A stretch of 64,000 bases of DNA from Okamejei kenojei (taxonomy: Eukaryota): contig CM069154.1 of the NCBI GenBank assembly GCA_035221665.1, positions 6,014,001 through 6,078,000 on the forward strand, written 5' to 3'. The notes beneath the pieces are model-generated. The model searched no databases, was not told the origin of the DNA, and saw only the letters and a program-made list of their open reading frames with translations. Each line of letters opens with the position of its first letter. The first letter of the stretch is position 1. Position numbers and translations under genes: made by a program. This document shows positions 17,018 through 61,767 of this stretch, in pieces.

Positions 17018-17200
17018 CTGTGGGAAAGGAGCAAACAGTCAGACACTGAGTGAACATCTGAAAATCAAACACTCGCCAATATTCACCATCTCTGTATGTT
17101 AGCCAGGGCCGCCAGGTTGTAGTCTGATCCATCCATCTACAGAGTAATAGAGTGATACACCATAGAAACAGGCCCAGATGTTCATATGTTGTTGAGGTTG

Positions 17201-20953: not shown

Positions 20954-21649
20954 CTGAAATGGAGGGGCGGAACTTTCAGATGGAGAACAAATGAACTGTT
21001 TAATTGAAATAGATACATATTGAAGATCACATGAAAGAAAACTTAAATCGTTCCATGATGTGTCATATTGCTTCACGGTCAATGTCTCCGGTCTGAAATG
21101 CAGGCAGCGCTGTTATTGTACCTGTTGTGTCGGTGTTCTGTCCCCGGGGTCAGTACAATTAGGGTTCACTCCCCACTCCAGATCCCTGAGCAGAAACTGG
21201 GCTGGGATCGCAGTGCGGTACTGAGGGAGCGCGGCAGTGTTGCAGGAGCTGCCTTTCAACAATCCCAGGCGGTTCCCGGCCTCTCACCCTACAGAAATAC
21301 CCCACTTTGCTATTTCATTGGTGGTGCCGCCGGCTGCGCTTCCAACATTCATCTCTCAATCGACACTGGGCCGGACCCGTGTTTAGACATTCACCGTCTC
21401 TACAACGCCCTGACTGAGGACAGAGGACGGACGAGTTACAATAAAGCGGGTCCCTTACTGGAGAGTGTTACTAGCGTGAAACGCACACCGCCAGATTCAG
21501 GGACAGTTTCATCCCAGCTGTTATCAGGCATCTGAATCATCCTACCACAAACAGAACTCCCATCTACCACTCTGAGAATCCTCGGACTACCCTTGATCGG
21601 ACTTTGCTGACTTTACCTTACACTAAACGTTATTTCATTTTCATGTATC

Positions 21650-27102: not shown

Positions 27103-27253
27103 NNNNNNNNNNNNNNNNNNNNNNNNNNNNNNNNNNNNNNNNNNNNNNNNNNNNNNNNNNNNNNNNNNNNNNNNNNNNNNNNNNNNNNNNNNNNNNNNNN
27201 NNNNNNNNNNNNNNNNNNNNNNNNNNNNNNNNNNNNNNNNNNNNNNNNNNNNN
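27103..27253. other. Assembly gap
   Basis: Run of N. Confidence 1.
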
Positions 27254-28302
27254 CACTGTCCACTGATTCAACCACTCTCCTGTACACACGGGGCAATTTA
27301 CAACGGGCAACATCTTTGAGAGCTGGGAGGAAACTGGAGCACTTTTCCCCCGCATTCCAAAGTCGTGCAGGATTGTAGGTTAATTGGCTTCTGTAAATTG
27401 TCCCGATGGAGCTAGTGCACTGGGATTGCTGGACGGTGTGTACTCAGTGGGCCGAAGAGCCTGTTTCCGCGCTGTATCCATAAACTAATTTTTAGGGTGG
27501 AATTTCACGAGATAAGTATTGCTTGGGATGAAACATTACATTTATGTGGAGGGGCTGTATAGGGGTTTTATACAATTCCATGCAGGACAGGTGAGGAAGG
27601 GGGAATCTATTACAGGTGTGCAAGATTGTGAACAGCACAGAGTATTTTTGGAAAATTTTGCATGACAGATATGTGTAAAAGTGGAGAACCTATGGTTAAG
27701 TTAAGAAGGAGGATGTTTCATGGGTGTCAAGTAATAGTGTTAAACCGTGTAGGTGGAGGTACCTGAATTGCCACAATGGACGAGGTACTGGTAAATGGGA
27801 TTAGTATCGATGGTACTGAATGGTCAACATTAACACAGTGGACCAAATGTGATACCGTCGTCTAGGAGTTAACTGTGGCCACATTTACTGATGATTTCTG
27901 TTCCCTTCCCATATTTTAGCGTCGGTCATGTGGAGATGATGGCGGGAAAATGAAAGTGCTTGGACTGTTGTCACTGCAACGTAGTTTAAAGGCGTGTAAT
28001 AATAAAAGGAAGTTCTAGCCGGGAAGCTGGCCTACACCAGCACTGGGAAATCTATTTCTGCAGCCCAGCAACCAAGTATTGACAAAGGAGCCATAATTCC
28101 ATCATTTTAATCTTGATAAGTTAATTAAATAACGTGCATGGATTTCAGGGCGTCGGGGGCTATGGGGAGAAGGCAGGAGAATGGGGTGAAGAAGGGAAGA
28201 TTCATCAGCCATGATGCAATGGTTTATTTCTGCTTCTATCACATGATCTTATAAACCACCCCATCCCCACTTCCCCTTCTCCTCATTCCCTCCACTACTT
28301 AC

Positions 28303-28617
28303 CAGTGCCGTTGATTCTCACTAGGAAACTGCAGGGCACGCCACTGCTGGCGATGGACACGTTGATTATTTCACTGGATTTTGATCCACGTTTATTTGAG
28401 GCTGTGCAATAATATTGATGGTGCTGGTGTTTGAAGTATTGACAATGTAGATCTAGGGCATTGTTGTCTGAGATATTTGACCATACCATTTAAGCATACC
28501 AGGTGTAGCTAATCGGAAGGGATCCCCGTAACGACTCCTAGGACACTGTCAATGAGCCCCCGAGACAGGAGTCATTGGCTGGTGACAGAAATCCAAGCAC
28601 AGGAACAGACACTGGTT
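28303..28617 (-). pseudogene. Pseudogene C: orphan C2-type Ig exon
   Basis: Splice sites intact, but the first domain Cys codon is TAG and a second stop follows (YTWYA*). No leader, V or TM exon remains in this unit. Confidence 0.85.
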
Positions 28618-29420
28618 CTGTGGGGATGGAGCAAACAGTCAGACAGTGAGTGAACATGTGAAAAGCAAACATTCTCCAATATCCACCATCTCTGTATCTT
28701 AGCAAGAGCCGTCAGGTTGAAATCTGACCCGCCCGTCTACATAGAATCATAGTGATACAGGCCCTTTGGTCTAACTTGCCCGCACTGACCAACACGCCCA
28801 ATCTACACTAGTTCCACCTGCTTGACCCTTAACCCTCTAAACTAAGCCCATTCATGTACCTTCCAAATTTCGCTTAAATGTTCAAGAGCCAAGAGTGTTT
28901 TATTGTCATTTGTCCCATATAGGGCTTACTTGCTGCAGTACAACAGAATATGTAATCATAATAAATAATATAACAAAAACTCAGTTAAAAAAAAAAACAA
29001 ACAATGTTGCGATAGTACCTGTCATAAGTACTTCCGTCGGCAGTTTGTTTCATATACCTATCAACATTTGTGTAAAAATGTTACTCCCCAGGTTCTTCTT
29101 AAATCATTCCCTCCTCGTCTTAAAACAATGTCCTCTGGTTCTCGATTCCCCTGCTTTGCGCAAAAGACTCTGTGAATTTAGCCGATCTATTCCTCGCATG
29201 GCTTGTTGCCTGCCATGAAATCATCCCTCAGCCTCCTGCGCGCCAAGAAATAATGTCCTAGTCTGCTCAACCCCTCCGGCCCTCGTCATCGCAACATCCT
29301 TGTAACCCTTCTCTGTGGCATATCCAACTTGACAGCATCTTTCTTATAACATGGTGATTAAAACAGACCATAAATCAGACAAATCATCAGACAAATCTTG
29401 AATTATATAGTACACTTCAG

Positions 29421-29663
29421 GAATTGGCCGCACGAAAACGGAGCATCGTTAATGCAAATCTGTCGGACATTTAAGGCAACAAGGAAGCTGCCCAATGGTC
29501 TAATCAAAATCAAACTATGTATGCATGAGTCCAATTATGATGGAAATCGACAGCGATACACTCCAATGCAGATGAGGACAATGTCAACCACTCAGATGTC
29601 ACATTTCAGTGCGACAGCCAAATTACCCGTCAGAATGCTCCTTCTCACAATTTACCAGATTGA
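29421..29663 (+). pseudogene. Antisense relic of an ITIM-type cytoplasmic exon (copy 1)
   Basis: cttcag|GAA start; ELAARKRSIVNANLSDI*GNKEAAQWSNQNQTMYA*VQL*WKST...EDNVNHSDV aligns by eye to the 61450-61767 exon. Confidence 0.6.
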
Positions 29664-29859
29664 TACTTCTCTGTGTCTCTCCATCCTCCCAGCTGCCAGA
29701 ACTACCATGTCTGCCACTGTACCAGTACACAGCAGCACCATCTGTCTTTGTTTTACATTTCCAACATCTGCAGTTTTTATTTAATCTTCCTTTAATCTGC
29801 AACTCTGCCACAAGTCTACGATACCAACATTCAAACACGCCATCGCTGCATTAGTATTT

Positions 29860-30245
29860 TCGGAAAGCAGATTGCGGTGGAGAGGGAAAGATGTGGCTAG
29901 TTGTTCGATCCCGTTGGAAGTGGCGAAAATGTCGGCGGATTACGTGATGTGTGCACATAGTAGCGTAGGCCAAGTTGTTCAGTGAAACGTTCGGTGAGTC
30001 CGGGCTTGGTCTCGCCGATATATAGGAATTCACACCTGGAACAACGGATATAGTAGATGAGGTTGGAGGAGATGCATGTGAACCTCTGCCCCACTCTGTA
30101 AGACTGTTGGAGTCCTTGGACGGAGTAGTGGGAAGAGATATAGGGACAGGTGTTGCATCTCCTGCAGTTGGAGGGGAAGGTACCTGGGGAGGGGGTAGTT
30201 TGGGTGGGAAAGGACGAGTTGACCAGGGAATTGCGGAGGGAGCGG
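29860..30245 (-). mobile_element. Penelope-like fragment
   Basis: CRRCNTCPY...QRFTCISSNLIYYIRCSRCEFLYIGETK (GIY-YIG). Confidence 0.8.
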
Positions 30246-32097
30246 TTATCTCTGTACTCAAAGTCTGTTAACACGGAAGAGCGGTGGACATAATGACAGA
30301 CCGAAAAAATGCAGGAGCCTCTCTGTGGGCCAGGCAACACCTCTGGATAAAATGGATAGGTGACGTTTCGGGTCGGGACCCCTCATGTAAACAATGATAC
30401 GTTGGATAAAATATGAAATTAGAAGAATAGAAACGTCTAAGATGTGTACACTTCCGGATCATTCCCTCTTGATGATTTTGTGAGTGTCCCGGCAGATCAA
30501 AAAGATAATCATTGGAACTTTTGTTTTGGCATATTACTGATGACAAGGGGCAAAACAGGAAGCTGCATAAGGCAGTAGGGGCTCTTCACCTGAAATCAGC
30601 TGAGGTTAATTGGAGTTTGACCCTCATCTCTCTGCTTCAACTGTTTAATTCAAATTTCAAACACCTTTGTGATGATATTCACGTTTTCAAAATTACAATC
30701 AATGTTGTAGTGGACTGTGAAGAAGTTTGTCTAGAATTAACACAGGAAGGAGATCAGCCGGGAAAGCGCGATGTGGAATGTAACTGACATGTGTAATGTA
30801 ACTCAACAAGGGCGAAGTGATACGCTTAGTGAAGTTAAATCAATGTGGAATATGGACGGTGAATTGAATTGTTAACTTGTCTTCTTTACAATGCAGAGCG
30901 AATAAATGATCAGAGCTGTGTTCATGTACATGTCATTTACTGACTTTGCACATCTGCTTGCAAAGATTAATTTCATTCTGTAGGCAACTAGCTGCATAAC
31001 CTAATATCTGCTGCGGGCTATCGTTATGGGTGTGTTACTTTCAGGGGAACAGTGCAGTTTATTCGGGTTGTGTGCATCAGTGGCAATGTTGTGCATCACG
31101 TGGTATGGGTGCAACACACTGATGTGTCCGCCACTGATGTTAGCTGATCGTTGGCGACCCTCAGTAAAGGATCTTTTGTTCGGGGCTATTTCTTGTTTAC
31201 TTGCCCAACTAAAAACACTGCAGAGAGGAACCGACGATACAGCAAAACAATTTAATTCTGTCTTCATTTGCCTTTAACCCATGACTTCTGCAAACACTTC
31301 TCAGCAAACAGTGTTACAACGAGCTGCTCGCAAGGTGCGGTTCAGAGATACGAATCTACACACCCTTGTTTCAGCAGCGCGAGCAAAGTGTCAGCACTGC
31401 AGAACAATTCAGTGAAAATAAATAAATGAGTGTTAGAACATATCAGATAGAAGTTCATTGCAAGCCAGCACCCACCACTAAAATCAACAGTGGCATCGAC
31501 CCGAAATCCTACGCATTCTTTCCCTCCAGTGATGCTGCCTATCCCGATGAGTTGCTCCAGCATTTTGTGCCTATATGTGGCATCTCAGACCGTTTATCTC
31601 TCACTATTTGTGAGGCACTCTGGGATATCTTGCAATGGGGAAATAATCCAACTCAAGATCATCCCTACAATTAGAACGTTAACAAACTCCATTTGAACGG
31701 GCCAGGCAGCATCATTGTGACCACAGAATCGGCAAGTATCTCTGGTTATTCAGCACTCCTCGGATATCTCTGGCCTGGGGGTTTGTGTGTTCAAAGAAGC
31801 TTCTGGTCTCGTCTCCTCGTCCCCCCGCTTACCGTGTGGACAATATTTATCTTTGTCAGTGGGACATTTACCCAAAGCAATCCTTGACTCTTTCCGAACT
31901 TTATGGTGGTTACTTCGTTTTTGCAGGTCACCATTTCTTATTTCCAAACAACATCCTTCATAGTTCTTTCATGGGCGGGGTTACAGTCACAAGTCAGACT
32001 GAGGAAAGCAACACAATGTATTTGCAGTTTCACACCCCGCGCTTTGCAAGCTGCAACTCAACCATTTTGTTCTGCACAAGAATAGACTTTCCACTAA

Positions 32098-32417
32098 TTT
32101 AGTTTAGTTTAGTTAATAGATACAACGAGGAAACAGACCCTTCGGCCCACCGAGTCCCACTGACCAGCAATCCCCGCACATTAACACTACCCCACACACA
32201 CTGGGGACAATTTACATTTATAGCAAGCCACTTAAGCTACGTACCTGTACGGCTTTGGAGTGTGGGAGGAAACGCAAGATCTCGAAGAAACCCCACGCGG
32301 TCTCGGTAGAACGTACAAACTCCGTACAGACAGCTCCCGTAGTCGGGATAGAACCCGGGTCTCCAGCGCTGCAAGAGCTGTTATGCAGCAACTCTACCGT
32401 TGTACCACCGTGGCCAC
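32098..32417 (-). mobile_element. tRNA-derived SINE (V-SINE/HE1-like)
   Basis: Same family and paralogous position as 6643-6940. Confidence 0.7.
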
Positions 32418-32826
32418 TAATTGTAGTCCTTTAACGCATTTGTACGGTGGAGAAAATGAATAACTCGTTGCAGCATTAAAATGTTTATAAATATTACGGT
32501 ACTCAAAATATGCGAAAATGGGATGATATAGAACCAGTGAGAAAGGGTTGATTGCTGGCTGACGCGGAGTCGCTGTGCCAAATGGTCTATATCCGTGCTG
32601 TATCATTCAATCACTTAATCAAAAAAATAGTTGTGCAAAAATACTGGAGTAACTCAGCGGGACAGGCAACATCACTGGATGAAAGGAATGGGTGCCGTTT
32701 CGGGTCCAGCCCCTTCTTCAGGGGAGAGGGAAATACTTGGATCAGGATCCGTGGTATGGAAACTGGACAAAGGGGATGGAGGTCAAAAAATGTAGAATAG
32801 ATCATTGTTAGCTGGGAAAAGGTAAC

Positions 32827-33697
32827 AAGTCAAGTCAAGTCAAGTTTATTCATCACATACACATACGGGATGTGCAGTGAAATGAAAAGTGGCAGTGCCT
32901 ACGGACTTTGTGCAAAAAACCAACACACTACAAACAGAATCACATGTTCTTTTTCATATTAAATATTGTGGGCGGTATTGTGGTACAGTAAGTTAGTAGA
33001 GTTAGTCCCTGGTGAGATAGGAGTTTACAGTCCGAATGGCCTCTGGGAAGAAACTCCTTCTCATCCTCTCCGTTCTCACAGCACGGCCACGGAGGCGTTT
33101 GCCTGACCGTAGCAGCTGGAACAGTCGGTTGCAGGGGTGGAAGGGGTCTCCCATTATCTTATTGGCTCTGGAGTTGCACCTCCTGATGTATAGTTCCTGC
33201 AGAGGGGCGAGAGAAGTTCCCATAGTGCGTTCGGCGGAACGCACTACTCTCTGCAGAGCCTTCCTGTCCTGGGCAGAACAATTCCCAAACCAGATTGTAA
33301 TATTTCCGGATAAGATGCTTTCCACAGCCGCAGAGTAGAAGCACTGGAGGATTCTCGGAGACACTCTGATTTTCCTCAATTGCCTTAGGTGGTAAAGGCG
33401 CTGCCTTGCCTTACTCACGAGCGCTGCAGCGTGCGATGTCCATGTCATATCCTCAGAGATGTGGACTCCCAGGTATTTAAAACAGCTCACCCTATCCACA
33501 GTATCCCCATTTATCCTCAATGGTGTGTACGTCCTCGGATGATGTGCCCTCCTAAAGTCCACGATCAGTTCCTGCGTTTTTTTGATGTTCAAGAGGAGAC
33601 TGTTCTCCTGACACCAGAGTGCCAGTTCAGCCACCTCCTCCCGGTAGGCCTTCCATCATTGTCTGAGATCAGGCCCACCACCGCGGTGTCATCAGAT
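32827..33697 (-). mobile_element. Rex1/Babar LINE 3' fragment inserted into a Penelope relic
   Basis: DDTAVVGLIS...WCQENSLLLNIKKTQELIVDFRR...FKYLGVHIS RT peptides; (cttga)n tail. Confidence 0.85.
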
Positions 33698-34631
33698 TGC
33701 AACAACATTGCAATTAGAGATAAAATGTAATCGGAGACTGTGAGACTGATCGGAGAACTGGGAGGGGGTGGGACTGGTATGGAAAGCAAGTGTCACTTGA
33801 AGTTAGAGAAGTCAATGTTCACACCGCTGTGGTGTAAGCTGTCCAAGTGAAATATGAGGAGCAGTTCCTCCAATTTGCGCTGGGACTCACTCTGACAATG
33901 GAGGATGCCCAGGAGAGAAATTACAATGCGGGAATGGGAGGAGGAGTTAAAGTGTTTAGCGACCGGGATATCAGGTAGGTTTAGGTGGACTGAGCGGAGG
34001 TGTTCAGCGAAACGATCGCATCTGTGGAGAAAAAATAAGTCTAATCGCCTGAACAATCTCGTTGCATACTTTTGTTCTGATGGGATAGCATGGTCTAAAA
34101 GATTAACTGATTGCCTTTCCTAAACCACTTTTAACGTTTGGCAACAGGAGGATTATCCAGCAGTCTGATTGCAGTCTGTTCTTCATCACTAATGTTGCAG
34201 TCTGAACAAAACAAATTAGACAAACCATTTATTGACAACAACCATTTTTTAAGAATCATTCTGTTGCATTATTATTCACTAATTTGTGAAATACATTTTT
34301 TTTTCCAGGAAGTTGAATGCATATGATATAGTTTAACAGAGCTATATCATATGCTCTGGAGCAGCAGAAACCATGCAGAGTTTAAAACCATAGATCGAAG
34401 CTAATGAAAGAAACCTTGGAAGAGGTGACAAAAATTATGGTGGTGCAAGCTAGGTGTCCTCAATGTAATTCGTGAGTCAAGTGGCGAGGTTCTGAATCAT
34501 CGCGTCTCTGCAAAAGACAATGTGAAGTCATCAAACTAGTGGGAATGACGCTTTATTTGACCTGACCACTCCCAATACCATGCTGTCTGGATTGGATGAT
34601 GGACCCCAACGAATCCACACTGGTCACATAA

Positions 34632-37600
34632 ATAGTAAGATTAAATGAGAACTTACCAGTTTGAAGTTTGATCTTTATTTTATGAGGAGTTACGATGAGG
34701 GATTACGTGAAGACCCCGCCAGGACGCATGCGCGACATTCTTCAAAGCAGTGGTGTGAAATCACAGATACCAGAGTAGACTAATATAGTAAGATAAGAGA
34801 ACTTCCATACCAGTTGAACTTTATAATAGAGGGTTTTGGGAGCGGAGGGCACGTAATCCCTCATCGTAACTCCTCATAAAATAAAGATCAAACTTCAAAC
34901 TGGTAAGTTCTCATTTAATCTTACTATTTTACTTCGGAGTCACGTGAGTGACTACGTGAAGATTTCAAAGCTCTGTGATTTCATGCCCTGGAACGAGACC
35001 ATGCTCACACACTGCCATTCTGGGACGGAGGATGAACGTATTTCACACACGACACTGTGCTGAAAAACAATAAAGGTATTATTCATACCTAAAATAATAT
35101 GCCCCACATTGGGTAATTTATTTTACAGAACTTAATTTTTCCCTGCAAAAGTCTCAGGATCGGCCACGGGTTTATTATAAAGCATTGAACCCCGCTGTGG
35201 CAAGGATGTGGTCCATAGGAACTCCCATCATCCTAGCGTCCGATGTAGATGCGGCCCTGTTGGAGTGAGATTTGAAACATTAGTATTCACCACTGCACGT
35301 AATACCACCCGAACCATCTGGATATGGTTTGCACTGTGACCTTAGGTGAGGGCATTTATGGCTAATGAGAAAGCTCTCTCCGTGCCCATAAGTGTCTTGG
35401 TGACTATATATTGGAAAGTATGTGTCACTATGCAGGGCCGACTATCTGCAGGATAGGCCAGAACTCTAATATTGGCCAAAGGAACCGGGTCAGTCTAGTT
35501 TAAGTACCCCTGTATGTAGCAGGTTATCTGCCATTTGTGACAGACATGACGTCCTATTCTACCTTGTGTAAGGACTGGACCCGTTGTGCTGATCCAAGTG
35601 CCATAATCATTCCCATCTAGGATATTAGTTTGTCCAGAGTGAGCCCCGATATTGGTGTCCATCCTCGTAACATGGTGTACTACCTATGTCCCATATATAG
35701 GTGTATCTGGACCTGGGGGGAAATAGAGTACAAATACCCCTCATTCGTTTAGGTACTAGTGGGTGTGATCCTATAGCCAGGTGATCACTCCCTCTGCCCA
35801 GATATTAGCTAGGGCACTCCTTGCACAATAATGGCACTGTAACTCAATCCTTCATCGAAATGAAGGGTGGCCAGAACTCCAGCACTTCAGTGTTGGTGGC
35901 TGAGTCATATGTATGTTTCGTCCTGGTGCTGAACACTTCCCATTTCCTGACATATGTCAGGTACTGTCTTCTCGTGGACTCCCTGTACGACGCTGAGATG
36001 GCATTGATCGTCCTGTCGGAGAGTCCGTATCCCAGAAATGGCCTGTTCAGAAACTGCAAATCAACAAGTTCATACAGTCATGGCACGGATACTTTCCCCG
36101 CACGGGGTGTGCCAACCTCCTTGGCCGTTGTTGATCCAGATGCAGGGTTCTGAGACCATCTTTGTACTGTTGGGAACCATGGTACCCGTTGCGGCGTCTT
36201 GTTTAATTATTGTAAGACTCGCCTGATGAGGCAGAAGGGGAAAATGCATAGCAAAAACAAATCCCCCCCCCCCCCCCCCCCTAATGCAGCGAGAAATCGT
36301 CCATCGCTGCCTGCCCCTGGGTCTGGTTTCCAAGCAACATATGTTGGTAGTTGGTGAATTAGTCTGGATGGAAAAAAAAGGTCGATATCTGGTGTCCCAT
36401 ACCGTCTATAATATCTGTACACAGTTTTCCGATCCAACATCCATTTAATGTTGTCGTTTGAATTTACGTGACCTGGTGTCCTGCCACTGTATTTTAGCTT
36501 ACCTGGAAGGTAAGTGGTTGAGATCCAAATCTCTCTCCCAGACACCAGTGCCAGATATTATTAGGCAATTCATCACATGATATCGACTTTATTTCACCCA
36601 TATGATTATATAGGCCCCCAGTGTGGTATCAATCTGTACCGTACATTTCAACTGGTGCTCATCTGAGCAGTAGGCCCTGAGTCCATGAAACGCTCCCAGC
36701 ATTTCTAGATAATTAATTCCTAGTGCTTTAAACAGAATAACTTTTGTGCACTCATCTGCCACCACAACTTGCGGTGGTATTAGTTGCTCCCCAACCTTTA
36801 GCACTGGCATCAGTCTGTAATGGTACCCTAGGGATATAGAATGGGGTGATGGGGGTTAGGATAATATGGAACATTTCTATCCACCATTTAATTCTAATTT
36901 ACTTTCCCTGGTAGTTGCATAGGCCTATTGAAATGGCCTGTATGATTTTTGAGAGCTAAAATTTCCCTCTTCCAGGTTTTATAATGAGTGGTCCAATTGT
37001 GCTGCTGGGAACGCAGCCACCAATTCCCAATCACTCTTGCTCCTTGCCGAATGGATGGTTCCCTGATGCCAGTGAGGCTTTTGCATACTCCCATCAAGTC
37101 TGTCACTTTTGTTTGGTGGCAAGGTGATAGACATATGAACAGAGTCAATAGTGAACCCCAAATAATCCATGGTAGTGGAGGGTTCCAATTTTGATTTATC
37201 TGGATGTACGTTAAACCTCTCTGTTGTGGCTGATACCACCAATGTAGCCAGCTCCAATTTCACCTACAAATGAGAATATCATCAAGGTAAGCCATGACGA
37301 TATGGGTATGTTTCTTTAAGTATGCTAAAGCTGGTTTTTAATAAATTTGTAATAGCCTGGGTGCTGATTACAACCCATTGATTAAGGCCTACTGCCATTG
37401 CTGTCCCATCCAGATAAATTTCAGGTATTTACGATGACCCTGTGTGTGACAAACGTGTCTATTTTGAAATGGGCATACTGAACGGAAGTATTTAGTTCGG
37501 TCAAATCTGTAATGATACGGCAACCACCATCTTTTAGTTTTTTATAAATATTTTTGATACGAACTCTTGAAATTCTCTGATTGTTTTCTCAATCCCTTTT

Positions 37601-39238
37601 GTGTTTAGTCTTAACAGTTCAGCATGGCCTGCTGTTCTCTCTTTTTGTGAGAGTATGAACTTCCTGCTAGGCGTATGCTGAACTGGGACGGTAGTTTGTA
37701 TACAAATTCAATTTTGTAATTCTGAATACTTCCGAGTATGTAAAAGTTCAGAGGTAAAAGTGCAGCACACATGATGAAACAAGTGCAACCGTCCCCCAAC
37801 TTTTAATGAATCGGACATGCAATTTTTTTTAAAGACAACCAACCCACCTACCTCCATGGTTACCGGTGTTGTGTGGGTTGTCTCCGCAGTTGTTTCTTCT
37901 GGTATTGTGTTGCTGCGTTGTGGGGTTTGGCGCGTTTGCCAAGAAGGCCGGGCTGGGCCATGGTCTGAAAGACCGCTGTGCAGGTGGGCCGGCCTTCGAG
38001 CTTTCACCACCAGATGTCTTCCATAGCACCGATGTCTGGTGGGTGTGTAGGGGTGCTGCCGCTGTTGATAGTGGGTTTTAGAGGTGCTTGGCACCTTGAT
38101 CAGGCCTATAGCCTTGGCTTCCTCATGCAGGTCTTTCACCTGCTTCGGGAGGTCCCCCAACAGCAATTTTGGCGCCTGTGTGCTACTTGTCTTGCATAAT
38201 TCCGCACTTCTTGATGATGCTCTTCCTGTAACTGTAAATCTCCACTGAGTATTACACAGTCTGCTAGAGCATCACGTAACTCTTCAGGCAAATCAACCCC
38301 ATCAGTTGTCCTGGTACTGCTGTGATTTAGCAGCCAGCAGTTTCCTCTGGAGCTTCACCTCCTGGCTCCTTATAGATGGGCTCCTGTTGCCCCAGATGGG
38401 GTCATAGACTGCTGGTACTTTAAGAGAAATGGAGTTCTCTGGAGCAATGTGCTTCCCAGCCATAAAGTTAATGGCTTGCTCCTGTAGCTGGTTTGTAGCC
38501 ATGTATTTTTTACTGGCTTGCAGCTTTGTATAGGCAGTCCTTCTTGAGTTGATACAGCATGTGTCCCACAATCTTCTGCTGCTCTCTCTTCTGGCACCCC
38601 TCACAGTTGACTGTTCAGCCGTTGCCCCTTCTTCAGGGTCCAGCCCAGCTCTGACCCCTAATGCTCCCCTGCGAAGAGGGTGAGACATTTGGCAGTCCTT
38701 GAAAGGATCCTGCCGTGGGTCTGCGAAGAGACCCACTGTGACTCTGCCCCTGCATAAACAGGTCACGCTGGAGCACTGCTCCCCACCCGCTCCCGCGGGA
38801 AAGACGCCCGCCGTCGCTATCTGTGAACAGGGTGTCTTCAGGTCCGGACCCAGCCGAGTCACGGACCTGTCCGACTTCCGGGTGGTTTTGCCGCCGACCG
38901 CGGCGCACCTGCGGTCTGTAGCGGCGAGAAGCCGGGAGCTGCTGGCAGCACCTGCAGCTCTGGAGAGACGGCACGCTGCTGGCTGCTTCCACAGCAGCAG
39001 TATCAGCTGCTGCTCTCCCCTGCGCGACTCCATGGTGCTTCCTCCGTTCTGCAAAAGAAACACACCGAGTCGCCACGCTCACCAGAAAAGGTAAGACTTA
39101 CCTTCAGTAATTTTTCAAAATTCGCGCTGGAGGAGCGGTGCTCCTCCCGACTGTCGCTTCCGCAATGCGTTCGACGATATGGCGCGCATGCGTGCTGGCG
39201 GGTCTTCACGTAGTCACTCACGTGACTCCGAAGTAAAA
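34632..39238 (-). mobile_element. DIRS1-like tyrosine-recombinase retrotransposon, full-length structure with degenerate ORFs
   Basis: Left terminus 34631-34708 is complementary to 34851-34928; right terminus 39204-39238 is complementary to 34927-34962 (ICR); imperfect ITRs. Remnants of gag, RT (MAYLDDIL, YLGFTIDSV), RNase H (INYLEMLGA), MT (TPDIDLF) and YR (SYRESTRRQY, HSNRAASTS). The empty site is seen near 13090. Confidence 0.9.
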
Positions 39239-39304
39239 TCACCCTTAACACACACAACCTGACAAAAACTCGTGATAACATCTACATAGATATTTGGTTT
39301 GTCT

Positions 39305-39340
39305 TCAGGATATTAAAACGTGCACGGTTTTTGTTTCTAT
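39305..39340 (-). pseudogene. Pseudogene D: candidate short cytoplasmic/terminal exon IETKTVHVLIS*
   Basis: Acceptor ccctgtccgtag, phase 0 matching the TM exon; AATAAA at 34552-34557 lies beyond the DIRS insertion. The acceptor is mutated in B. Confidence 0.35.
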
Positions 39341-39725
39341 CTACGGACAGGGTATTTGAAAGCATTAATGGAAACCGTTTGGAAACATTTGGGGGAAGAG
39401 AAGTGATTGCTTTGGCCAGAGGGTGGTGAATCTATGGATTTCATTGCCAAAGGAATCTGTGAAGGCCAAGTCAATTCACACCGGAGATGCTGCCTGTCCC
39501 ACTGAGTTACTCCAGCATTTTTCTATCTATCTAAATCAACTGATATTTTTAAGGCGGAGATTTTCATATTCTTCATAAATAAGGATGTCAATGGTTATGG
39601 GGAGAAGGCAGGAGAATGGGATCGAGAGGGAAGGATAGATCAGCCGTGATTAGGGGCGGCTTAGATATGATGGGCTGAATGGCCAAATTCGTCTATAATT
39701 TATGAACGATGACAATAAAACCTAC

Positions 39726-39816
39726 CTTAGAGCCTCTTGTGAACACCGCAGTTGAGATACTCCAGATCACAAGCAGGAGAAAGAGCAGCCAGCGCCCCAC
39801 TCTCCATGAGATGTAA
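39726..39816 (-). pseudogene. Pseudogene D: transmembrane exon YISWRVGRWLLFLLLVIWSISTAVFTRGSK (open)
   Basis: Same splice sites and length as the gene B TM exon. Confidence 0.75.
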
Positions 39817-41313
39817 CTGGGCAAAGGCTAAGAGTACAGAATCAATGGGAGGAAACGAGACAGTTAATCTTTGAAGCATTTACCTGTTATTTGCTTCATA
39901 ATCTTGGTGAAGTGGAGCCGGGCGAAGCAGCAGGGTCAATGGAGATCATCTTGGTAAAATAACGGGTGTTGGACTGGGAGGGGTGGTGGAGGGGACATAT
40001 GATCCCCAATTATTGACCTCATAGCTGGGGCATGGCTACAAGACTGGGAATGAGAGACTATGCGGTTAAATGGATTCGGAACAGAGAAATAAGTGAGACA
40101 GGGCAGTGAATACAAAGTAGATAGACACTAAATGTTGGAGAAAGCGGGAGAGGCAGCATCTCTGGAGAGAAGGAATGCGTGACGTTTTGGTCAAGACCCT
40201 TCTTCAGACTGGGAGTCACGGGAGAGGGAAACTAGGGATGTGGGAAGGATATAAAGAACAGTATAATACCCTGGAAGAAAGAAAATGCAGCTGCAAGGAA
40301 GATTATAATAACATCCATATTGATGGACAGGAATAATAAAAAGGGATCGATTCTAATGGTGGAAGGGAGATGGGGCAATAAATATGGAAATAGATGAGGC
40401 CAGTAAATAAAATAAATTAAAAATTATAATGCTTAATCTCACACACTCGATATTACTTTAATTCACGCGGTAGGTGTATGGAGGGAGGAAAATGTGTTCG
40501 AAAAGTCGGTTAAAGTTTCGCTCATTACGGCGTCCCTTTTATTAACTTTCTTATTTCTGAAATCAAGCATAGCACAAGAGAGTGATAGAAAACCAGATCT
40601 ATATCGATTGTAATAAGATAAATGACAAAATATTCCCACTTTCACGACTATATTGTGATGGAATATTCAGAGATTTTTTTTATGGTCTCAAGTTTCATTG
40701 TGCAAGTTAACTCTGTTCGGTGTATTCGGTTTGATTACACATGGTGAAGTGAAGGAGCAGGATGTTCCAAGGGTATCAAAAAATATTTTTAAACCCTGGT
40801 AAATGGGATTAGTATCGATGGCACTGAATGGCCAACATTAACACAGTGGACCAAATCTGACACCGTCGTCTAGGTGTTAACTGTGGCCACATTTAGTGAT
40901 AATTTCTGATCCCTTATCATATCTGTGTCGGTCATATGGAGATGGTGGTGGGAAAGTGAAAGTGCTTGGACTGATGTCATTGCAAACCTGGTTTAAAGCT
41001 GTGTAAACACAAGCGGCAATTCTATGCAGTAAGCTGGCCTCCACCAGCACTGGGTAATATATTGCTGGGGCCCAACAACCATGTATTGACAAATGGTCCA
41101 TAATTCCATCATATTAATCTTGATAAGTTAATTGAATAACGTGCATGGATTTCAGGGTGATAGAGGTTATGGGGAGAAGGCAGGAGAATGCGGTGAAGAG
41201 GCGAAGATAGATCAGCCATGATTGAATGGTCTCTATTTGTGCTTCTATCACATGATCTTGTGAACCACCCCACCCCCACTTCCCTTCTTCTCCTCATTCC
41301 CACCACTACTTAC

Positions 41314-41574
41314 CAGTGCCGTTGATTTTCATTAGAAAACTGCAGGGCACGTCATTGCTGGAGATTGACACGTTGACCATTTCACTAGATTTTGATCCAC
41401 GTTGGTTTGAGGCTGTGTCTGAGATGTTTGAATCCACAGATGGGGTATTTTCATACCAGCTGTAGTTAATCGGAAGGGATCCCCGGACCGACTCACAGGA
41501 CACTGTCACTTAGCCCCCGACACAGGGTTCATTGGCTGTTGACTGAAATCCAAGCACAGGAACAGACACGGGTT
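41314..41574 (-). pseudogene. Pseudogene D: C2-type Ig exon
   Basis: In-frame TAA after VGG and a 60-nt deletion removing LDLHC...YYC (261 vs 321 nt). Confidence 0.85.
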
Positions 41575-42160
41575 CTGTGGGAAAGGAGCAAACAGTCAGA
41601 CACTGGGTGAACATCTGAAAATCAAACACTCTCCAATATCCACCATCTCTGTACAACCAGAGCCGCCAGGTTGTAATCTGACCAATCCATCTATATAGAG
41701 TCATAGAGGCATACAGCACAGAAACAAGCCCTTCGGTCTAAATTGCCCGTTCTGACCTACACGACCAATCTACACTAGTTTCACCTGCAATTGCTTGGCC
41801 TTTAACCCTCGAAACTTATCCTATTCATGTACCTGTTCATTTTTTTTTCTTAAATGGTGCGATATTACCTGCCATAACTATTTCTGTCGGCTGTTTGTTT
41901 CATATACCTAACAACTTTTGTGTGAAAACATTACACCCCAGCTTCTTGTTAAATCATTCCCCCCCATCTTAAAACGATGTCGTCTGGTTCTCGATTCCCC
42001 TACTCTGGGCAAAAGACTCTGTGCATTTACTGGATCTATTCCTCGGATGATGTTGTACCTGCCATAAGATCATCCCTCATCCTCCTGCGATCCAAGAAAT
42101 AAAGACCAAGTCCGCTCAGCCCCTCCATGTAATCAGGCCCTGAAGTCATAGCAACTTTAG

Positions 42161-42420
42161 GAATTGCCAGCAGGAAACGGGAGCATCGTTTATGCAACAC
42201 CGCCAGATATTCAAAACAACAACGAAGCTGCCCATTTGTTGAATCAAAATCAAACTGTATACAGGAGTGCAATTGCGAAGGAAATCGACAGGGACACACT
42301 CCAGTACAAATAAGGACAATGTCTGCTACTCAGATGTTACATTTCAAAGTGACAGCCAAATTGCCCGTCAGAAAACTCTTTCTCCTCACAATCCATTAAC
42401 CAGATTTATACTTCTTCGTG
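42161..42420 (+). pseudogene. Antisense relic of an ITIM-type cytoplasmic exon (copy 2)
   Basis: ctttag|GAA start; ELPAGNGSIVYAT...EAAHLLNQNQTVY/(frameshift)GVQLRRKSTGTHSSTNKDNVCYSDV; shares TNKDNV with gene E. Confidence 0.65.
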
Positions 42421-42964
42421 TCTCTCCATCCTCCCAGCTGCCAGAACTACCATGTCTGTCACGGTACCAGTACACAGCAGCACCATCTGGCTTTGTTTTA
42501 CAATTCCAGCATCTGCAGTTAATCTTCTTTTAATCTGACACTCTGCCTCAATTGTATAATACCAACATTCAAACATCTCATTAGTGCAACAGTATCACTA
42601 TCACCAACTTTTTAATTTCCTTGCATAAAATTGTTGAGTGATACTGTTGCACTAATGAGGTGTGCGAATGGCGGTATTGTAGAATTGTGTGTAGGGAGCG
42701 AATGGGAAAGTGGAATAACTAGTGTGACCGGTGATCGCTCGTCGGTGAAGACTCGTTGGGCCGAAGGATCCGTTTCCATGTTGCATTTCTAAACTACAGC
42801 TAAATATCCCGGTGAACTTTTCCTGCAACCTCTCCAAACCTTTCACATCTTTTATTTTATAAAGCGGCGACCAGAACTGTGCACCAGACTCCCATATGTG
42901 ACCCAACAAATGTTTTATGCAGATGCCAAATTGGAGACATGAAGTCGCTCACTGAGTAACCTAC

Positions 42965-43274
42965 CTTCAGATACCTCGAGATGGACATTAAATGTTGGTT
43001 CGCCAGGTGTAGTAATTCCACGACTGTACCATCCTGTATCTCCAGAGTGAAGACCCTCCACAGTCCCAGTATTCCTCGTGCCGGGTTATCTATGATTGAC
43101 ACTCTTCCGCTCTGTCCATGTTTCCATTTGTTTGCACATTGTGCACATTGGCGACTTGTCCCATTGCACCAGTATTTGTGCGTGAGCGGCACACTGCTGC
43201 ATAGTGACAATCGATTGAGACCGCTCTTCCCACATCCACTTGCAGTGCACTCTCTGCCCACAGTGCGCCCGAAA
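42965..43274 (-). pseudogene. Pseudogene D: frameshifted V-domain exon
   Basis: VSGALWAESALQVDVGRAVSIDCHY.../KYWCNGTSRQC...GRVSIIDNPARGI; 310 nt with several indels; splice sites retained. Confidence 0.85.
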
Positions 43275-43299
43275 CTGAAGGAAACTCCTTTCATATATT

Positions 43300-45796: not shown

Positions 45797-47200
45797 ACCC
45801 TCAATAACTTCTCGTTTGACTTGTCCCATTTCCTCCAAATACAAGGCGTAGCTATTGGCTCATGCATGGGCCCCAGCTATGCCTGTCTCTTTGCTGGGTA
45901 CATCGAACAATCCTTGTTTGAGGCATACCAGGGCCCCATCCCCGACCTCCACCTCCGTTACATCGACGATTGCTTTGGTGCTACCTCCTGCACCCACACA
46001 CAACTGACTGACTTCATCCGCTTCACCACTAAGTTCCATCTGGCACTCAAATACACCTGGACCATTTACGACACTTCCCTACCATTTCTTGACCTCAGTA
46101 TCTCCATCGCAGGTGATAGATTTCTAACGGACATCCACTACAAACCCATTGACTCGCATGGCTATCTAGACTACGCTTCTTCCCACCCTGCTTCCTGTAA
46201 GGACTCCATCCCCTATTCCCAATTTCTCCGTCTCCACCGCATCTGCTCCCAGGATGAGGTGTTCCACACCAGGGCATCGCAAATGTCCTTGTTCTTTGGG
46301 GAACGGGTGTTCCCCCCCCCCCCCCCCAACTATAGATGAGGCTCGCACCAGGGTCTCTTCAATACCCCGTCACACTGCCCTCTCTCCCTATACCCCCACT
46401 CGCAACAAGGGCAGAGTCTCCCTAGTCCTCACGTTCCACCGCACTAGCCATCACATACAGCAAATAGTCCTCCATCAGTTTCGCCACCTGCAACGTGACC
46501 CCACCACTCGCCACATCTTCCCATCACCCCCCTGTCTGCTTTCCACAAAGACCGCTCCCTCCGTAACTCCCTTGTCAATTCTTCCATTTCCTCCCGCACC
46601 ACCCCCTCTTTCCCTTGCAATCGCAAGAGATGCTACACTTGTCACTTTACCTCCCCCCTCGACTCCATTCAAGGACCCAAGCAGTTGTTACAGGTGCGAC
46701 AGAGGTTCACCTGCATCTGCTGCTCTAGATGTCAGCTGATCTAAATCGGTGAGACCAAGCGTCGGCGTGGCGATCATTTCGACGAACACCTCCGCTCAGT
46801 CCACATTAACCAAACTGACCTCCCGGTGGCTCAGCACTCCCCCTCCCATTCCGGATCTGACCTCTCTGTCCTGGGCCTCCTCCATGGCCAGAGTGAGCAA
46901 CACCAGAAATTGGAGGAACAGCACCTCATATTCCGCTTAGGCAGTCTGCATCCCGGTGGTCTGAACATTGAATTCTCCCAATTTCGTTAGCCCTTGCTGT
47001 CCCCTCCCCTTCCTAGCACTCCCTCGGGCTCCTCTTCCTCCTTTTTCCTTTCTACCCCCCCCCCCCCCCCCCATCAGTCTGAAGAAGGGTTTCGGCACGA
47101 AAAGTTGCCTATTTTCTTTACTCCATATATGCTGCTGCACCCGCTGAGTTTCTCCAGCACTTTTGTCTACCTTCGATTTTCCAGCATCAAAAGTTCCTTC
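45797..47200 (+). mobile_element. Penelope-like element (RT plus GIY-YIG remnants plus terminal repeat)
   Basis: [31 protein letters not shown]...LRYIDDCFG...LPFLDL...SIPYSQFLRL. Confidence 0.9.
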
Positions 47201-50200: not shown

Positions 50201-52601
50201 CATCCCCAACTTCTCTGCTACTGTTAGGTGGCCTGTACACAACACCCACCAGCGTTTTCTGCCCTTAGTGTTTTGTATCTCTACCCATACCGATTCCACA
50301 TCCTCCAAGCTAATGTCCTTCCTTTCCATTGCTTTAATCTCCTCTCTAACCAGCAACGCTACCCCACCTCCTTTTCCTTTCTCTCTATCCCTCCTGAATA
50401 TTGAATATCCCTGGATGTTCAGCTCCCAGCCTACGTCACCCTGGAGCCATATCTCCGTGATCCCAACTATATCATAATCATTAATATCTATCTGGCACGT
50501 TCAACTCGTCCACCTTATTACGAATACTCCTTGCATTGAGACACAAAGCCTTCAGGCTTGTCTTTACAACGCATTTACCCCTTATACAATTTTGCTGAAA
50601 AGTGGCCCTTTTTGATTTTTGCCCTGGTTTTGTCTGCCTGCCACTTTTACCTTTCACCTTGCTACCTAATGCTTCTACCGTCATTTTACACCCTCCTGCC
50701 TCTCTGCTCTTGTACCCATCCCCCTGCCACATTAGTTTAAATCCTCCCCGACAGCACTAGCAAACACTCCCCCAAGAACATTGTTCCATTCCATTCCAGG
50801 TGCAAACCGTCCTGTTTGTACCGGTCCCACCTCCCCCAGAACTGGTCCCAGTGCCCTAAAAATTTGAATCCCTCCCCCTTGCACCACTTTTCAAGCCACG
50901 TATTCATTTGCATTATCCTCCTATTTCTACTCTGACTGGCCCGTGGTACTGGTAGTAATCCGGAGATTACTACCTTTGAGGTCCTACTTTTAAGTTTATC
51001 TCCTAGCTCCCTAAATTCACCTTGTAGGACCTCATCCCTTTTTTTACCTATATCGTTGGTGCCACATGCACCACGACAACTGGCTGTTCACCCTCCCCCT
51101 CCAGAATGTTCTGCAGCCGTTCAGTGACATCCCTGACCTTTGCACCAGGGAGGCAACATACCATCCTGGAGTCTCGTTTGCGGCCGCAGAAACGCCTATC
51201 TATTCCCCTGACAATTGAATCCCCTATTACTATTGCCCTTCCCCTCTTTTTTCCCCCCTCATGTGCTGCAGAGCCACCCATGGTGCCATGAACCTGGCTG
51301 CTGCTGCATTCCCCTGATGAGCCATCTCCCTCAACAGTATCCAAAATGGTATACCTGTTTAGGAGGGAGATGACCGCAGGGGACTCCTGCACTACCTGCC
51401 TACTGCTTTGCTGGCTATTGGCCACCCGTTCCCTTCTTGTCCTCTTCCTCTTACCTGCGGTGTGACCAACTCACTGTACGTGCTATCCACGACTTTCTCC
51501 GCATCGTGGATGCTCCAGTATGAATCCAGCCGCAGTTCCAATCGTTCAATGCGGTCTGCCAGGAGCTGCAGCTGGACACACTTCCTGCAAACGTAGTCAC
51601 CAGGGACACCGACCATCTCCCAGATCTCCCACATGTTGCACGCTGAACAAACCACGGGGCCAATCTCTACTGCAATTGGATTTATGAAAGGGAAATCATG
51701 CCTGACTAATCCTCAGGAATATTTTGAGGATGTGACAAGTAAAATGGATGAAGGGGTGCCAGTGAATGCAGTGTATCTAGACTTTCAGAAAGCCTTTGAT
51801 AACGTCCCGCCCGGGTGAGAGGTGACTAAAATTAAAGCACATGGTATTGGATGTAGGGTGTTGACATGGATAGAACATTGGTTGGCAGACCAGAAGCAAA
51901 GGGTAGGAGTGAACGGGTCCTTTTCAGAATGGCAAGCAGTGGCGAGTGGAGTGCCACAAGGCTCGGTGTTGCGGCCGCAACTGTTTACCATATATACTAA
52001 TGATTTGGAAAAGGGAATTAGGAGCAACACTAGCAATTTTGCGGATGACACAAAGATGGATGGCAGTGTGAACTGTGAAGTGGATGTTAGGAGGTTGCAG
52101 GGTGATTGGACAGTTTGAGTGCGTGGGCAGATGCTTGCCAGATGCAGTATAATATAGATAAATGTGAGGCTATCCACTTTGGCGGCAAAAACAAGGGGGC
52201 AGATTATTATTACAAAGGGGTTAGGTTAGGTAAGGGGGAGGTGCAGCGAGACCTGGGCGTCCTTCTACAACGGTCACAAAGTTAGCTTACAGGTACAGCA
52301 GGCAGTGAAAAAAGCTAATGGAATGTTGGCCTTCATAATAAGAGGTTTTCAGTATAGGAGTAAGGAGGTTCTTCTGAAGTTGTATAGGTCTCACGTGAGA
52401 CCACATCGGGAGTATTGTGTATAGTTTTGGTCTCCTAATTTGAGGAACGACATCCTTGTGATTGACGCAGTGTAGCGTAGGTTCACGATATTGATCCCTG
52501 GGATGGCGAGACTATCATCTGAGAAAAGATTGAAAAGACTAGGCTTGTATTCACCGGAGCTTAGAAGGATGAGGGGGGGGGGGGGGGGGTATCTTATAGA
52601 A
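47205..52601 (+). mobile_element. Plus-strand CR1 fragment split into 47205-47645 and 51672-52601 by a nested CR1
   Basis: ...SPSQH / GFMKGKSCLTN... is continuous across the insertion. Confidence 0.8.
47642..51668 (-). mobile_element. Near full-length CR1 LINE (ORF1 zinc finger plus SGNH esterase; ORF2 APE plus RT), frameshifted
   Basis: CSACNMWE...CRKC; AIVIGDSIVRG; LCLNARSIRNK; VIMGDFN; LGKSDH; NYRPVSLTS; YLDFQKAFDKV; KFADDTKLG; 3' tail. Confidence 0.92.
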
Positions 52602-52603
52602 GC

Positions 52604-53878: not shown

Positions 53879-53915
53879 CGGGCAGCGAGGAGATGAGAAG
53901 AATGGAAATCCACAT
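53879..53915 (-). pseudogene. Pseudogene D: leader exon MWISILLISSLP with mutated donor (GT>GA)
   Basis: G|gagagt instead of G|gtgagt. Confidence 0.8.
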
Positions 53916-61449: not shown

Positions 61450-61767
61450 CTAAGAAGCAACCCTGGCATAAATTGGCTGTGCAGAATCTTGCAGTTTGCC
61501 AGGGGACCTGGCATTGCCCCTTGGGGGACCGCTTGGGGATTTAACACTTGCATAGGTGACATTGTCCTCACTGGTAACATAATGCTTTCCTTGGGAGATG
61601 ACGTTGTCTTTGTTGGTAACGGACGGTCCCATTCTCGATCTCCTTTGAAACTGCACCGCTGCATACATGATCCCGCTGTCATTGTTGGCCAACTGGGCAG
61701 CTGTCTCGTCGTCTCGAGAATACTGCAGATTCGCATAAGCAGCACTTTCTTCCGGTGTTGGTATTTC
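61450..61767 (-). CDS. Gene E: terminal cytoplasmic exon of an inhibitory receptor (rest of gene right of the window)
   Basis: Acceptor tttgtttatgttag, phase 0, 105 codons plus stop: EIPTPEESAAYANL...GIMYAAV...NVTYASV...PIYARVAS*. Two consensus ITIMs (IMYAAV, VTYASV) and two ITIM-like motifs. Confidence 0.8.
   Translation of the reverse strand, partial: EIPTPEESAAYANLQYSRDDETAAQLANNDSGIMYAAVQFQRRSRMGPSVTNKDNVISQGKHYVTSEDNVTYASVKSPSGPPRGNARSPGKLQDSAQPIYARVAS

What the first reader, a model, noticed from the sequence alone, without database searches (positions are those of the whole stretch)
29421..42420. Inverted fossil ITIM-tail exons embedded in activating-type gene units C and D
Seen: two plus-strand segments (29421-29663 and 42161-42420) start with ag|GAA like gene E's last exon and keep its motif order (SIVYA/NANL, EAA, TMYAxVQ, TNKDNV/EDNVxYSDV). 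They lie antisense, 0.6-0.8 kb upstream of the C2 exon. Inference: an inhibitory gene's tail was inverted or captured during the rearrangement that built these activating units. This could be a footprint of inhibitory-to-activating conversion, or the remnant of an opposite-strand inhibitory gene.
Basis: partly seen in the sequence, partly recalled or inferred. Interest (0 to 1): 0.8.

Follow-up and report, generated by a model that had tools for sequence, protein, structure and literature searches.

The report
Dead inverted inhibitory-tail exon relics
Two decayed, back-to-front copies of the last exon of an inhibitory immune receptor (skate MDIR family) lie inside broken receptor gene copies; they are real fossils of gene-cluster reshuffling with no sign of present function.

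Summary
A profile built only from the inhibitory tails of 15 receptors of other rays, sawfish and skates scores 40.4 bits on 29421-29657 (+), covering the whole tail, and 27.8 bits on 42255-42395 (+). The best score in 30 shuffled windows is -0.2. The only other hit in the window is the live tail of gene E (61453-61767, -), which is 83% identical to clearnose-skate MDIR2.

Both segments are dead. C has three stop codons and has lost two tyrosines. D has a 2-bp deletion and has lost its stop codon. They share no disabling change, and dN/dS between them is 0.90. They are low-copy, not a dispersed repeat. An independent sample and a related species hold the D copy with the same LINE junction.

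The host units C and D are pseudogenes, not working activating genes. No other inhibitory-gene exon lies on either strand. A 5'-truncated LINE ends within 56 bp of the fossil's start, and TE-like sequence begins about 20 bp after its stop.

The most likely history is one rearrangement that set an orphan tail exon head-to-head with a C2 exon, followed by segmental duplication and neutral decay. An inhibitory-to-activating conversion is neither shown nor excluded. Elsewhere in this genome the scan noted an unrelated ITIM-tail loss (s1-879992, untested).

The parts
29421..29663 (+). Fossil C: pseudo-exon homologous to the ITIM-bearing last exon of MDIR-type inhibitory receptors. It has three in-frame stops. 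Tyr1 is changed to Asn and Tyr3 to His. The terminal TGA lies at the position of the living stingray-type stop.
   Evidence: HMM 40.4 bits over profile positions 1-80/84; tblastn E=1.4e-10 against the P0003 tail; translation
42161..42395 (+). Fossil D: the same pseudo-exon. A 2-bp deletion near 42254 splits it into two frames, and the stop codon is lost (TGA to TTA). The three tyrosines are retained, but only VCYSDV still fits the ITIM consensus.
   Evidence: tblastn E=6.9e-9; HMM 27.8 + 1.8 bits; C-D alignment
29407..29837 (+). Full block shared by C and D (D: 42148-42575), 82% identical. It begins 7-14 bp before the exon start and runs ~175 bp past the stop.
   Evidence: self-BLAST; alignments
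42148..42575 (+). D copy of the shared block.
   Evidence: Contigs of two samples of the same species and of a related species cover 42087-42447.
28737..29364 (-). LINE-Y in unit C: a 5'-truncated LINE fragment with its (CATAGA)-type 3' terminus near the C2 exon. Its truncated 5' end lies at most 56 bp from the fossil's first base.
   Evidence: tblastn with a LINE ORF of the window; DNA alignment to four LINE copies; sequence
41686..42154 (-). LINE-Y in unit D. Relative to C, about 115 bp are deleted, so LINE sequence now ends 7 bp from the fossil exon.
17139..17175 (-). Stub of the LINE-Y 3' terminus retained in unit B. Beyond it, B's sequence diverges from C and D.
   Evidence: alignment of B, C and D; sequences
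28298..28642 (-). C2 pseudo-exon of unit C (two stop codons).
41315..41599 (-). C2 pseudo-exon of unit D (one stop codon and a 20-codon deletion).
42948..43290 (-). V pseudo-exon of unit D (spread over three frames, with a stop).
39714..39818 (-). Activating-type TM exon of unit D (SYISWRVGRWLLFLLLVIW..., Arg in the membrane span), open reading frame intact. Unit B has its counterpart at 13573-13680. Unit C has none.
61453..61767 (-). Live last exon of gene E: 105 codons with four Tyr motifs (AAYANL, IMYAAV, VTYASV, PIYARV). It is 82.6% identical to the tail of clearnose-skate MDIR2.
29859..30246 (-). Penelope-like element fragment forming the right flank of fossil C. Its two pieces are in permuted order relative to units A and B, so this is a rearrangement junction. 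The V and leader exons are missing beyond it.
   Evidence: self-BLAST
29680..29775 (+). Stretch after the fossil's stop that resembles the 3' terminal ~110 bp of an abundant repeat (copy at 9889-10021). The D counterpart is 42424-42527. This is a possible old TE tail, not original 3' UTR.
   Evidence: local alignment z=4.7-5.6, above all 300 shuffles; motif CCAGCATCTGCAGTT

Best explanation
The two segments are paralogous, non-functional relics of one ancestral orphan copy of the terminal exon of an inhibitory MDIR-family receptor. That exon encodes the cytoplasmic tail with three ITIM-type tyrosines.

A structural rearrangement placed this exon head-to-head against the C2 exon of an activating-type MDIR unit. 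The rearrangement was either an inversion or inverted insertion of a small genomic fragment, or the overwriting of the rest of an opposite-strand gene. The exon kept at most 56 bp of upstream sequence and little or no original 3' UTR. If the LINE that now separates the two exons is removed, the two splice acceptors face each other across only about 150-190 bp.

The whole C2 / LINE / tail block was then copied by segmental duplication into units C and D. Each copy has since decayed independently and neutrally, together with its host unit.

Shown: homology to ITIM tails; orientation; pseudogene state of the fossils and of their hosts; a single origin before the C/D duplication; low copy number; presence in a related species.

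Inferred: the type of rearrangement, and that the block is older than the split of units B, C and D.
For: Homology: HMM of 15 foreign tails scores 40.4 and 27.8 bits against a null maximum of -0.2; tblastn E=1.4e-10 and 6.9e-9; colinear alignment from the first residue to the stop.

Family: gene E's tail is 82.6% identical to MDIR2 of Rostroraja eglanteria.

Single origin: C and D share the LINE junction, a one-codon deletion (NQNQ) and an inserted DS.

Independent neutral decay: no shared stop or frameshift. dN/dS is 0.90 with a bootstrap interval of 0.43-2.34. C-D identity in the fossil (77-83%) lies within the range of the flanks.

Orphan status: tblastn with full-length homologues finds V and C2 exons only on the minus strand. 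An HMM of the inhibitory TM/juxtamembrane segment finds nothing on either strand.

Host decay.

LINE boundaries.

Reads: contigs of an independent sample of the same species cover the fossil. A 361-nt contig of a related species spans 42087-42447 with 12 mismatches and no gap, so it has the same junction and the same 2-bp deletion. Summed depth on the fossil bins is about 2-7 times single copy, against about 1e5 on the LINE bins. An RNA-like run gives zero depth on the fossil.
Against: - The mechanism is not resolved. The upstream 56 bp show no similarity to gene E's last intron, and they have a poor pyrimidine tract.
- The 'ag' before GAA would also be produced by the conserved ...Thr-Gln|Glu exon junction of a spliced mRNA, so a retrocopy origin is not excluded.
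- The stretch after the stop looks TE-derived, so the fossil is sandwiched between TE sequences. This would also fit TE-mediated capture.
- The RNA evidence is one small run kept only as contigs, so absence of expression is weak.
Confidence: 0.6

Rival explanations
1. The fossil marks the event that converted an inhibitory MDIR gene into the founder of the activating units: one rearrangement built the activating gene and inverted the old tail.
For: Units B and D carry an activating-type TM exon with Arg. Unit B keeps the 3' stub of the same LINE that abuts the fossil, so the configuration may predate the B/C/D split. Activating receptors do arise repeatedly from inhibitory ones in KIR and Ly49 (PMC2213150).
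Against: The fossil lies upstream of C2 and inverted, not downstream of the TM exon where a replaced tail would remain. Known conversions work by point changes or by swapping the signalling domain. No inhibitory TM or juxtamembrane exon accompanies the fossil. The apparently intact activating unit B has no fossil. The fossils' tail type differs from the cluster's own live tail, since they lack its 14-residue insertion.
Confidence: 0.12
2. The fossil is a partial retrocopy or TE-mediated capture. A reverse transcriptase primed on a TE 3' tail switched to an inhibitory MDIR mRNA, producing a chimeric insert of tail-coding sequence followed by a TE tail in the same orientation.
For: TE-tail-like sequence follows the stop in the same (+) orientation after about 20 bp. 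The 'cag|GAA' boundary equals the expected spliced Gln|Glu junction found in all living proteins. The upstream sequence has no pyrimidine tract and no similarity to gene E's intron.
Against: The 10-18 codons upstream of GAA in C do not match the conserved ...RGGNNETQ segment. The TE-tail similarity is modest (z about 5). No poly-A tract or target-site duplication was recognised.
Confidence: 0.12
3. The segments still function, for example as the last exon of a plus-strand transcript or as an antisense regulatory element inside the V-C2 interval.
For: The stretch 29664-29783 is 93-95% identical between C and D, higher than the coding part. D keeps a 96-codon ORF at 42243-42530.
Against: Equally conserved patches occur elsewhere in the C-D alignment. 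Other evidence against function: stops and a frameshift; dN/dS of 0.90; no upstream plus-strand exons; zero depth in the RNA-like run; pseudogene hosts.
Confidence: 0.03
4. The similarity is due to chance, or the segments belong to a dispersed repeat.
For: Similarity to gene E alone is weak. TE fragments flank both copies.
Against: 40.4 and 27.8 bits against -0.2 in shuffles. Only two copies in the window. Read depth is low-copy. There is no significant alignment of the fossil to LINE copies.
Confidence: 0.01

Closest known systems
MDIR2 (modular domain immune-type receptor 2) of the clearnose skate and its batoid homologues annotated 'polymeric immunoglobulin receptor-like'
   Same: The cluster has the same family architecture: a CD300/pIgR-like V-set domain, a C2 domain, a TM segment, and a tail with ITIM-type tyrosines encoded by one last exon. 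Gene E's tail is 82.6% identical to MDIR2. The fossils align colinearly with these tails.
   Different: The fossils are dead, solitary and inverted. They lack the 14-residue insertion and the fourth C-terminal tyrosine motif of the skate MDIR2/gene E type. In length they resemble the three-tyrosine tails of stingrays and mantas, at about 40% identity.
Activating KIR and Ly49 genes derived from inhibitory homologues (Abi-Rached and Parham 2005, PMC2213150)
   Same: Both are paired activating/inhibitory Ig-type receptor clusters evolving by birth and death, in which traces of inhibitory tails are associated with activating-type genes.
   Different: In KIR and Ly49 the switch is made in place, by a charged TM residue plus a stop codon in the ITIM, or by recombination of the signalling domain. 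The relic therefore stays downstream and in the same orientation. Here the relic is inverted, lies between the V and C2 exons, and sits in pseudogenes.
Gene fragments and pseudo-exons in TE-rich multigene immune clusters (LRC/KIR/LILR type)
   Same: An orphan exon left by duplication, inversion and TE insertion, evolving neutrally.
   Different: This is a specific case in a cartilaginous-fish MDIR cluster. I found no description of it in the papers searched.

Membership tests
MDIR family inhibitory tail exon (homology) | Significant, colinear similarity to the last-exon-encoded cytoplasmic tail of MDIR-type receptors | tested here: met
   HMM 40.4 bits (C) and 27.8 bits (D); tblastn 1.4e-10 and 6.9e-9. 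Gene E and MDIR2 anchor the family.
MDIR family (the cluster as a whole) | V-set domain of CD300/pIgR type followed by a C2-type Ig domain, with activating (charged TM) and inhibitory (ITIM) members | tested here: met
   Pfam V-set 5e-13 and Ig_2 2e-07 on exons of unit B. 71-73% (V) and 62% (C2) identity to MDIR2. Arg-containing TM exons. ITIM tail of gene E.
Functional ITIM | (S/I/V/L)xYxx(I/V/L) in an open, expressed cytoplasmic reading frame | tested here: not met
   C: SIVNANL (Tyr lost), TMYA-stop-V, VNHSDV (Tyr lost). D: SIVYATP (+3 is Pro), LYTGV after a frameshift; VCYSDV fits the consensus but lies in a broken frame.
Functional exon | Intact frame, usable acceptor with pyrimidine tract, upstream exons on the same strand, transcript evidence | tested here: not met
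   Stops and a frameshift. A LINE ends within 56 bp upstream. No plus-strand exons. Zero depth in the one RNA-like run, which is weak evidence.
Dispersed repeat / transposable element | Many copies genome-wide; similarity to TE sequences | tested here: not met
   Two copies in the window. Summed contig depth is about 2-7 times single copy, against about 1e5 for the adjacent LINE. At least one further copy about 89% like D exists elsewhere. Only the stretch after the stop looks TE-like.
Processed retrocopy | Preceding-exon sequence directly upstream of the exon junction, poly-A tract, target-site duplication | tested here: inconclusive
   The upstream 56 bp match neither gene E's intron nor the conserved juxtamembrane segment. 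No DNA of a close living paralogue was available.
Relic of in-place inhibitory-to-activating conversion (KIR/Ly49 type) | ITIM-coding remnant downstream of the TM exon, in the same orientation, in a gene with a charged TM | tested here: not met
   The fossil is on the opposite strand and lies between the V and C2 exons.

The most novel reading that the evidence does not exclude
The head-to-head C2 / tail junction is the breakpoint scar of the rearrangement that founded the activating MDIR lineage of this cluster. All activating units (B, C, D and others outside the window) would then descend from a founder that carried the inverted inhibitory tail in its V-C2 intron, and the live unit B later lost everything except a ~40-bp stub of the adjoining LINE.
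Probability: 0.15. Interest if true: 0.55.

Novelty: new member of a known kind. Interest (0 to 1): 0.3.

Why it matters
This is a clean, datable example of how a paired-receptor cluster in a cartilaginous fish is rebuilt by duplication, inversion and transposon insertion. It also shows that a second, now extinct or unsampled, type of inhibitory tail existed in the skate MDIR family. For annotation, units C and D should be called pseudogenes, and the two segments should not be joined to any gene model. The finding does not reveal a new mechanism or a new kind of receptor.

Tried and rejected
Searches and tests that gave nothing:
- Word-indexed protein search with the 105-residue tail: no hit, because of the length window.
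- Pfam on the tail and on the fossil ORFs: no hit.
- DNA-level alignment of the fossils to gene E's exon and flanks: only a weak coding match, and none in the intron or 3' UTR.
- Lenient alignment of the fossil block and of D's right flank to LINE copies: scores at noise level with inconsistent coordinates. I therefore make no claim that the fossil is LINE-derived. The 'LINE-Z' fragment next to D's V exon rests only on an eye match of the translated ORF.
- Similarity of the post-stop stretch to three in-window copies of an abundant repeat: none. Only the copy at 9889-10021 gave z about 5.
- Search for plus-strand V, C2, TM or juxtamembrane exons: none.

Tools and papers not available:
Genomic DNA of P0001, P0003 and P0019 could therefore not be compared, and the breakpoints could not be mapped in other species.
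- The Cannon 2006 MDIR paper is not held. It is cited through PMC3031540.

Limits kept to:
Exons were searched one by one, by reference.
- The N runs at 27103-27253 and 60816-60946 were left untouched.
Full report
**What the window is.** The window is a transposon-rich cluster of Ig-superfamily receptor genes of a skate. All recognisable V, C2 and TM exons lie on the minus strand.

Exon inventory:
- Intact leader and V exons occur in unit A (leader 2941, V 1222-1575) and unit B (leader 23702, V 20622-20975).
- Unit B also has an intact C2 exon (16692-17042) and an activating-type TM exon with an arginine in the membrane span (13573-13680).
- Unit D has the same TM exon, intact (39714-39818). 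Its C2 exon (41315-41599) carries a stop and a 20-codon deletion, and its V exon (42948-43290) is spread over three frames.
- Unit C has a C2 exon with two stops (28298-28642). It has neither a V nor a TM exon.
- Gene E contributes only its last exon (61453-61767, minus strand). This exon has 105 codons and four tyrosine motifs, and it starts behind tag|GAA.

**Family.** Searching all protein representatives with gene E's tail gave three relatives: a Rhinoraja longicauda protein (81% identical), a Hemitrygon akajei 'polymeric immunoglobulin receptor-like' protein, and a Narcine protein. Two region-restricted word searches added 14 stingray, manta and sawfish tails, plus MDIR2 of the clearnose skate and a Leucoraja erinacea protein.
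- Gene E's tail is 82.6% identical to MDIR2. The V exons are 71-73% identical and the C2 exon 62%.
- The cluster therefore belongs to the modular domain immune-type receptors. These are a multigene family of activating and inhibitory receptors described from the clearnose skate (Cannon et al. 2006, cited through PMC3031540).

**The observation.**
- Against gene E alone the similarity is weak (E=0.26 and 0.006).
- Against the stingray tail P0003 it is strong. C aligns from the first residue to the stop (29421-29660, E=1.4e-10), and D aligns over its second half (42255-42395, E=6.9e-9).
- A profile built only from 15 tails of other species scores 87.2 bits on gene E, 40.4 bits on C (profile positions 1-80 of 84), and 27.8 + 1.8 bits on D in two frames. 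It scores nothing else in six frames.
- The best score in 30 composition-preserving shuffles of the window is -0.2 bits.

**State of the fossils.**
- C has three in-frame stops and has lost the first and third tyrosines (SIVNANL, VNHSDV).
- D has a 2-bp deletion near 42254 and has lost its stop codon.
- They share in-frame peculiarities: a one-codon deletion giving NQNQ, an inserted DS after FQ, and SDV for ADI. They share no disabling lesion.
- dN/dS between them is 0.90, with a bootstrap interval of 0.43-2.34.
- Their nucleotide identity (about 80% in the coding part) lies within the range of the neighbouring non-coding sequence.
- They have therefore drifted neutrally since about the time of the C/D duplication.
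- They lack the 14-residue insertion and the fourth tyrosine motif of gene E and MDIR2. Their nearest living tails, about 40% identical, are from sawfish and manta. They represent a tail lineage different from the cluster's own living one.

**Anatomy around them.**
- The C-D homology is colinear from about 25.7-29.84 kb to 40.0-42.58 kb. The fossil was therefore copied as part of a larger unit.
- Between the C2 exon and the fossil lies a 5'-truncated LINE on the minus strand (C 28737-29364, D 41686-42154).
- In C, at most 56 bp separate its truncated end from the exon. D has lost a further ~115 bp, so LINE sequence ends 7 bp from the exon.
- Unit B shares the first ~37-46 bp of this LINE's 3' terminus and then diverges. 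The LINE is therefore older than the B/C/D split, and B has lost what lay beyond it.
- After the stop codon, about 20 bp on, comes a stretch resembling the 3' end of an abundant repeat (z about 5).
- Beyond 29837 / 42575 the two units differ. C runs into a Penelope-like fragment whose pieces are permuted relative to units A and B, and then into 5' flank with the V and leader exons missing. D runs into another degraded repeat and then its V pseudo-exon.
- No inhibitory-type TM or juxtamembrane exon exists anywhere in the window on either strand.

**Reads.**
- Contigs of two samples of the same species cover the fossil. One contig bridges the LINE/fossil junction.
- A related species has a 361-nt contig over 42087-42447 with 12 mismatches and no gap. 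It thus has the same junction and the same 2-bp deletion, so the arrangement predates that species split.
- Summed contig depth on the fossil bins is about 2-3 times (42214-42347) and 5-7 times (42348-42481) the single-copy level. On the LINE bins it is about 1e5. The fossil is not a dispersed repeat.
- A contig about 89% like D, with a 1-nt deletion at 42324, is too similar to D to be C. At least one further copy therefore exists elsewhere in the genome.
- An RNA-like run shows nothing on the fossil. It does hold a contig joining the C2 exon end to the TM exon through 45 unplaced bases, which suggests that an activating paralogue is expressed.

**Interpretation.** With the LINE removed, the acceptor of the C2 exon (minus strand) and the acceptor-like start of the tail exon (plus strand) face each other across only about 150-190 bp.
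- This is the geometry expected when a breakpoint in a V-C2 intron is joined to a breakpoint just upstream of a last exon in opposite orientation. An inversion, an inverted templated insertion of a small fragment, or the overwriting of an opposite-strand gene could each produce it.
- I cannot distinguish these three.
- I also cannot exclude a retrocopy. All living proteins read Thr-Gln|Glu at this exon junction, so 'cag|GAA' is also what a spliced mRNA would give. In addition, the upstream 56 bp resemble neither gene E's intron nor the juxtamembrane exon.
Known conversions in KIR and Ly49 act in place or by swapping the signalling domain (PMC2213150).
- The LINE stub in unit B keeps open the possibility that the configuration is ancestral to all activating units here.

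**Verdict.** These are real, statistically solid, non-functional exon relics in pseudogene units of an MDIR cluster. They are a new instance of a known kind of thing. Interest is modest.

**Limits.** The only RNA evidence is one small run kept as contigs.

Noticed in passing
window 16912-19796: Unit B carries a ~1.4-kb tandem duplication in its V-C2 interval. It includes a half copy of the C2 exon (18242-18451) that runs into a Penelope-like fragment. If spliced in, this would disrupt the receptor.
   Followed up: partly
window 52601-52786: A fifth V exon copy is cut off after about 62 codons by a LINE fragment (52157-52578). The leader-like region at 53709-53977 no longer has a recognisable MWIP start.
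   Followed up: partly
window 61453-61767 (-): Gene E keeps the tyrosine of the first motif (AAYANL), where clearnose-skate MDIR2 and the Leucoraja protein have arginine (AARVNL). The skate-type tail contains an internal duplication (SVTNKDNV / VTSEDNV) that is absent from ray, sawfish and fossil tails.
   Followed up: partly
window 39726-39818 and 41312-41385 (run X21): A 627-nt contig of a run labelled as possible RNA joins the C2 exon end to the activating TM exon through 45 unplaced bases. It is 97% and 88% like unit D, so it probably comes from an expressed paralogue with a small stalk exon.
   Followed up: no
window 42277-42473: Reads of two samples contain a further copy about 89% like fossil D, with a 1-nt deletion at 42324. 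It is neither C nor D, so a third fossil or a living relative lies outside the window.
   Followed up: no
window 42178: All laid contigs of three runs read A where the window has C. This changes codon 6 of fossil D from Asn to Lys, as in fossil C. It is a variant or a small assembly error.
   Followed up: no
window 62708-64000 (+): A LINE reverse-transcriptase ORF fills gene E's last intron, so the rest of gene E lies beyond the window's end.
   Followed up: no
window 9551-9890, 19571-20400, 46445-46987: There are several Penelope-like element fragments with the GIY-YIG endonuclease motif (YIGET...EH). The copy at 9551-10025 ends in the very abundant ...CCAGCATCTGGAGTTCCTTCC tail.
   Followed up: partly
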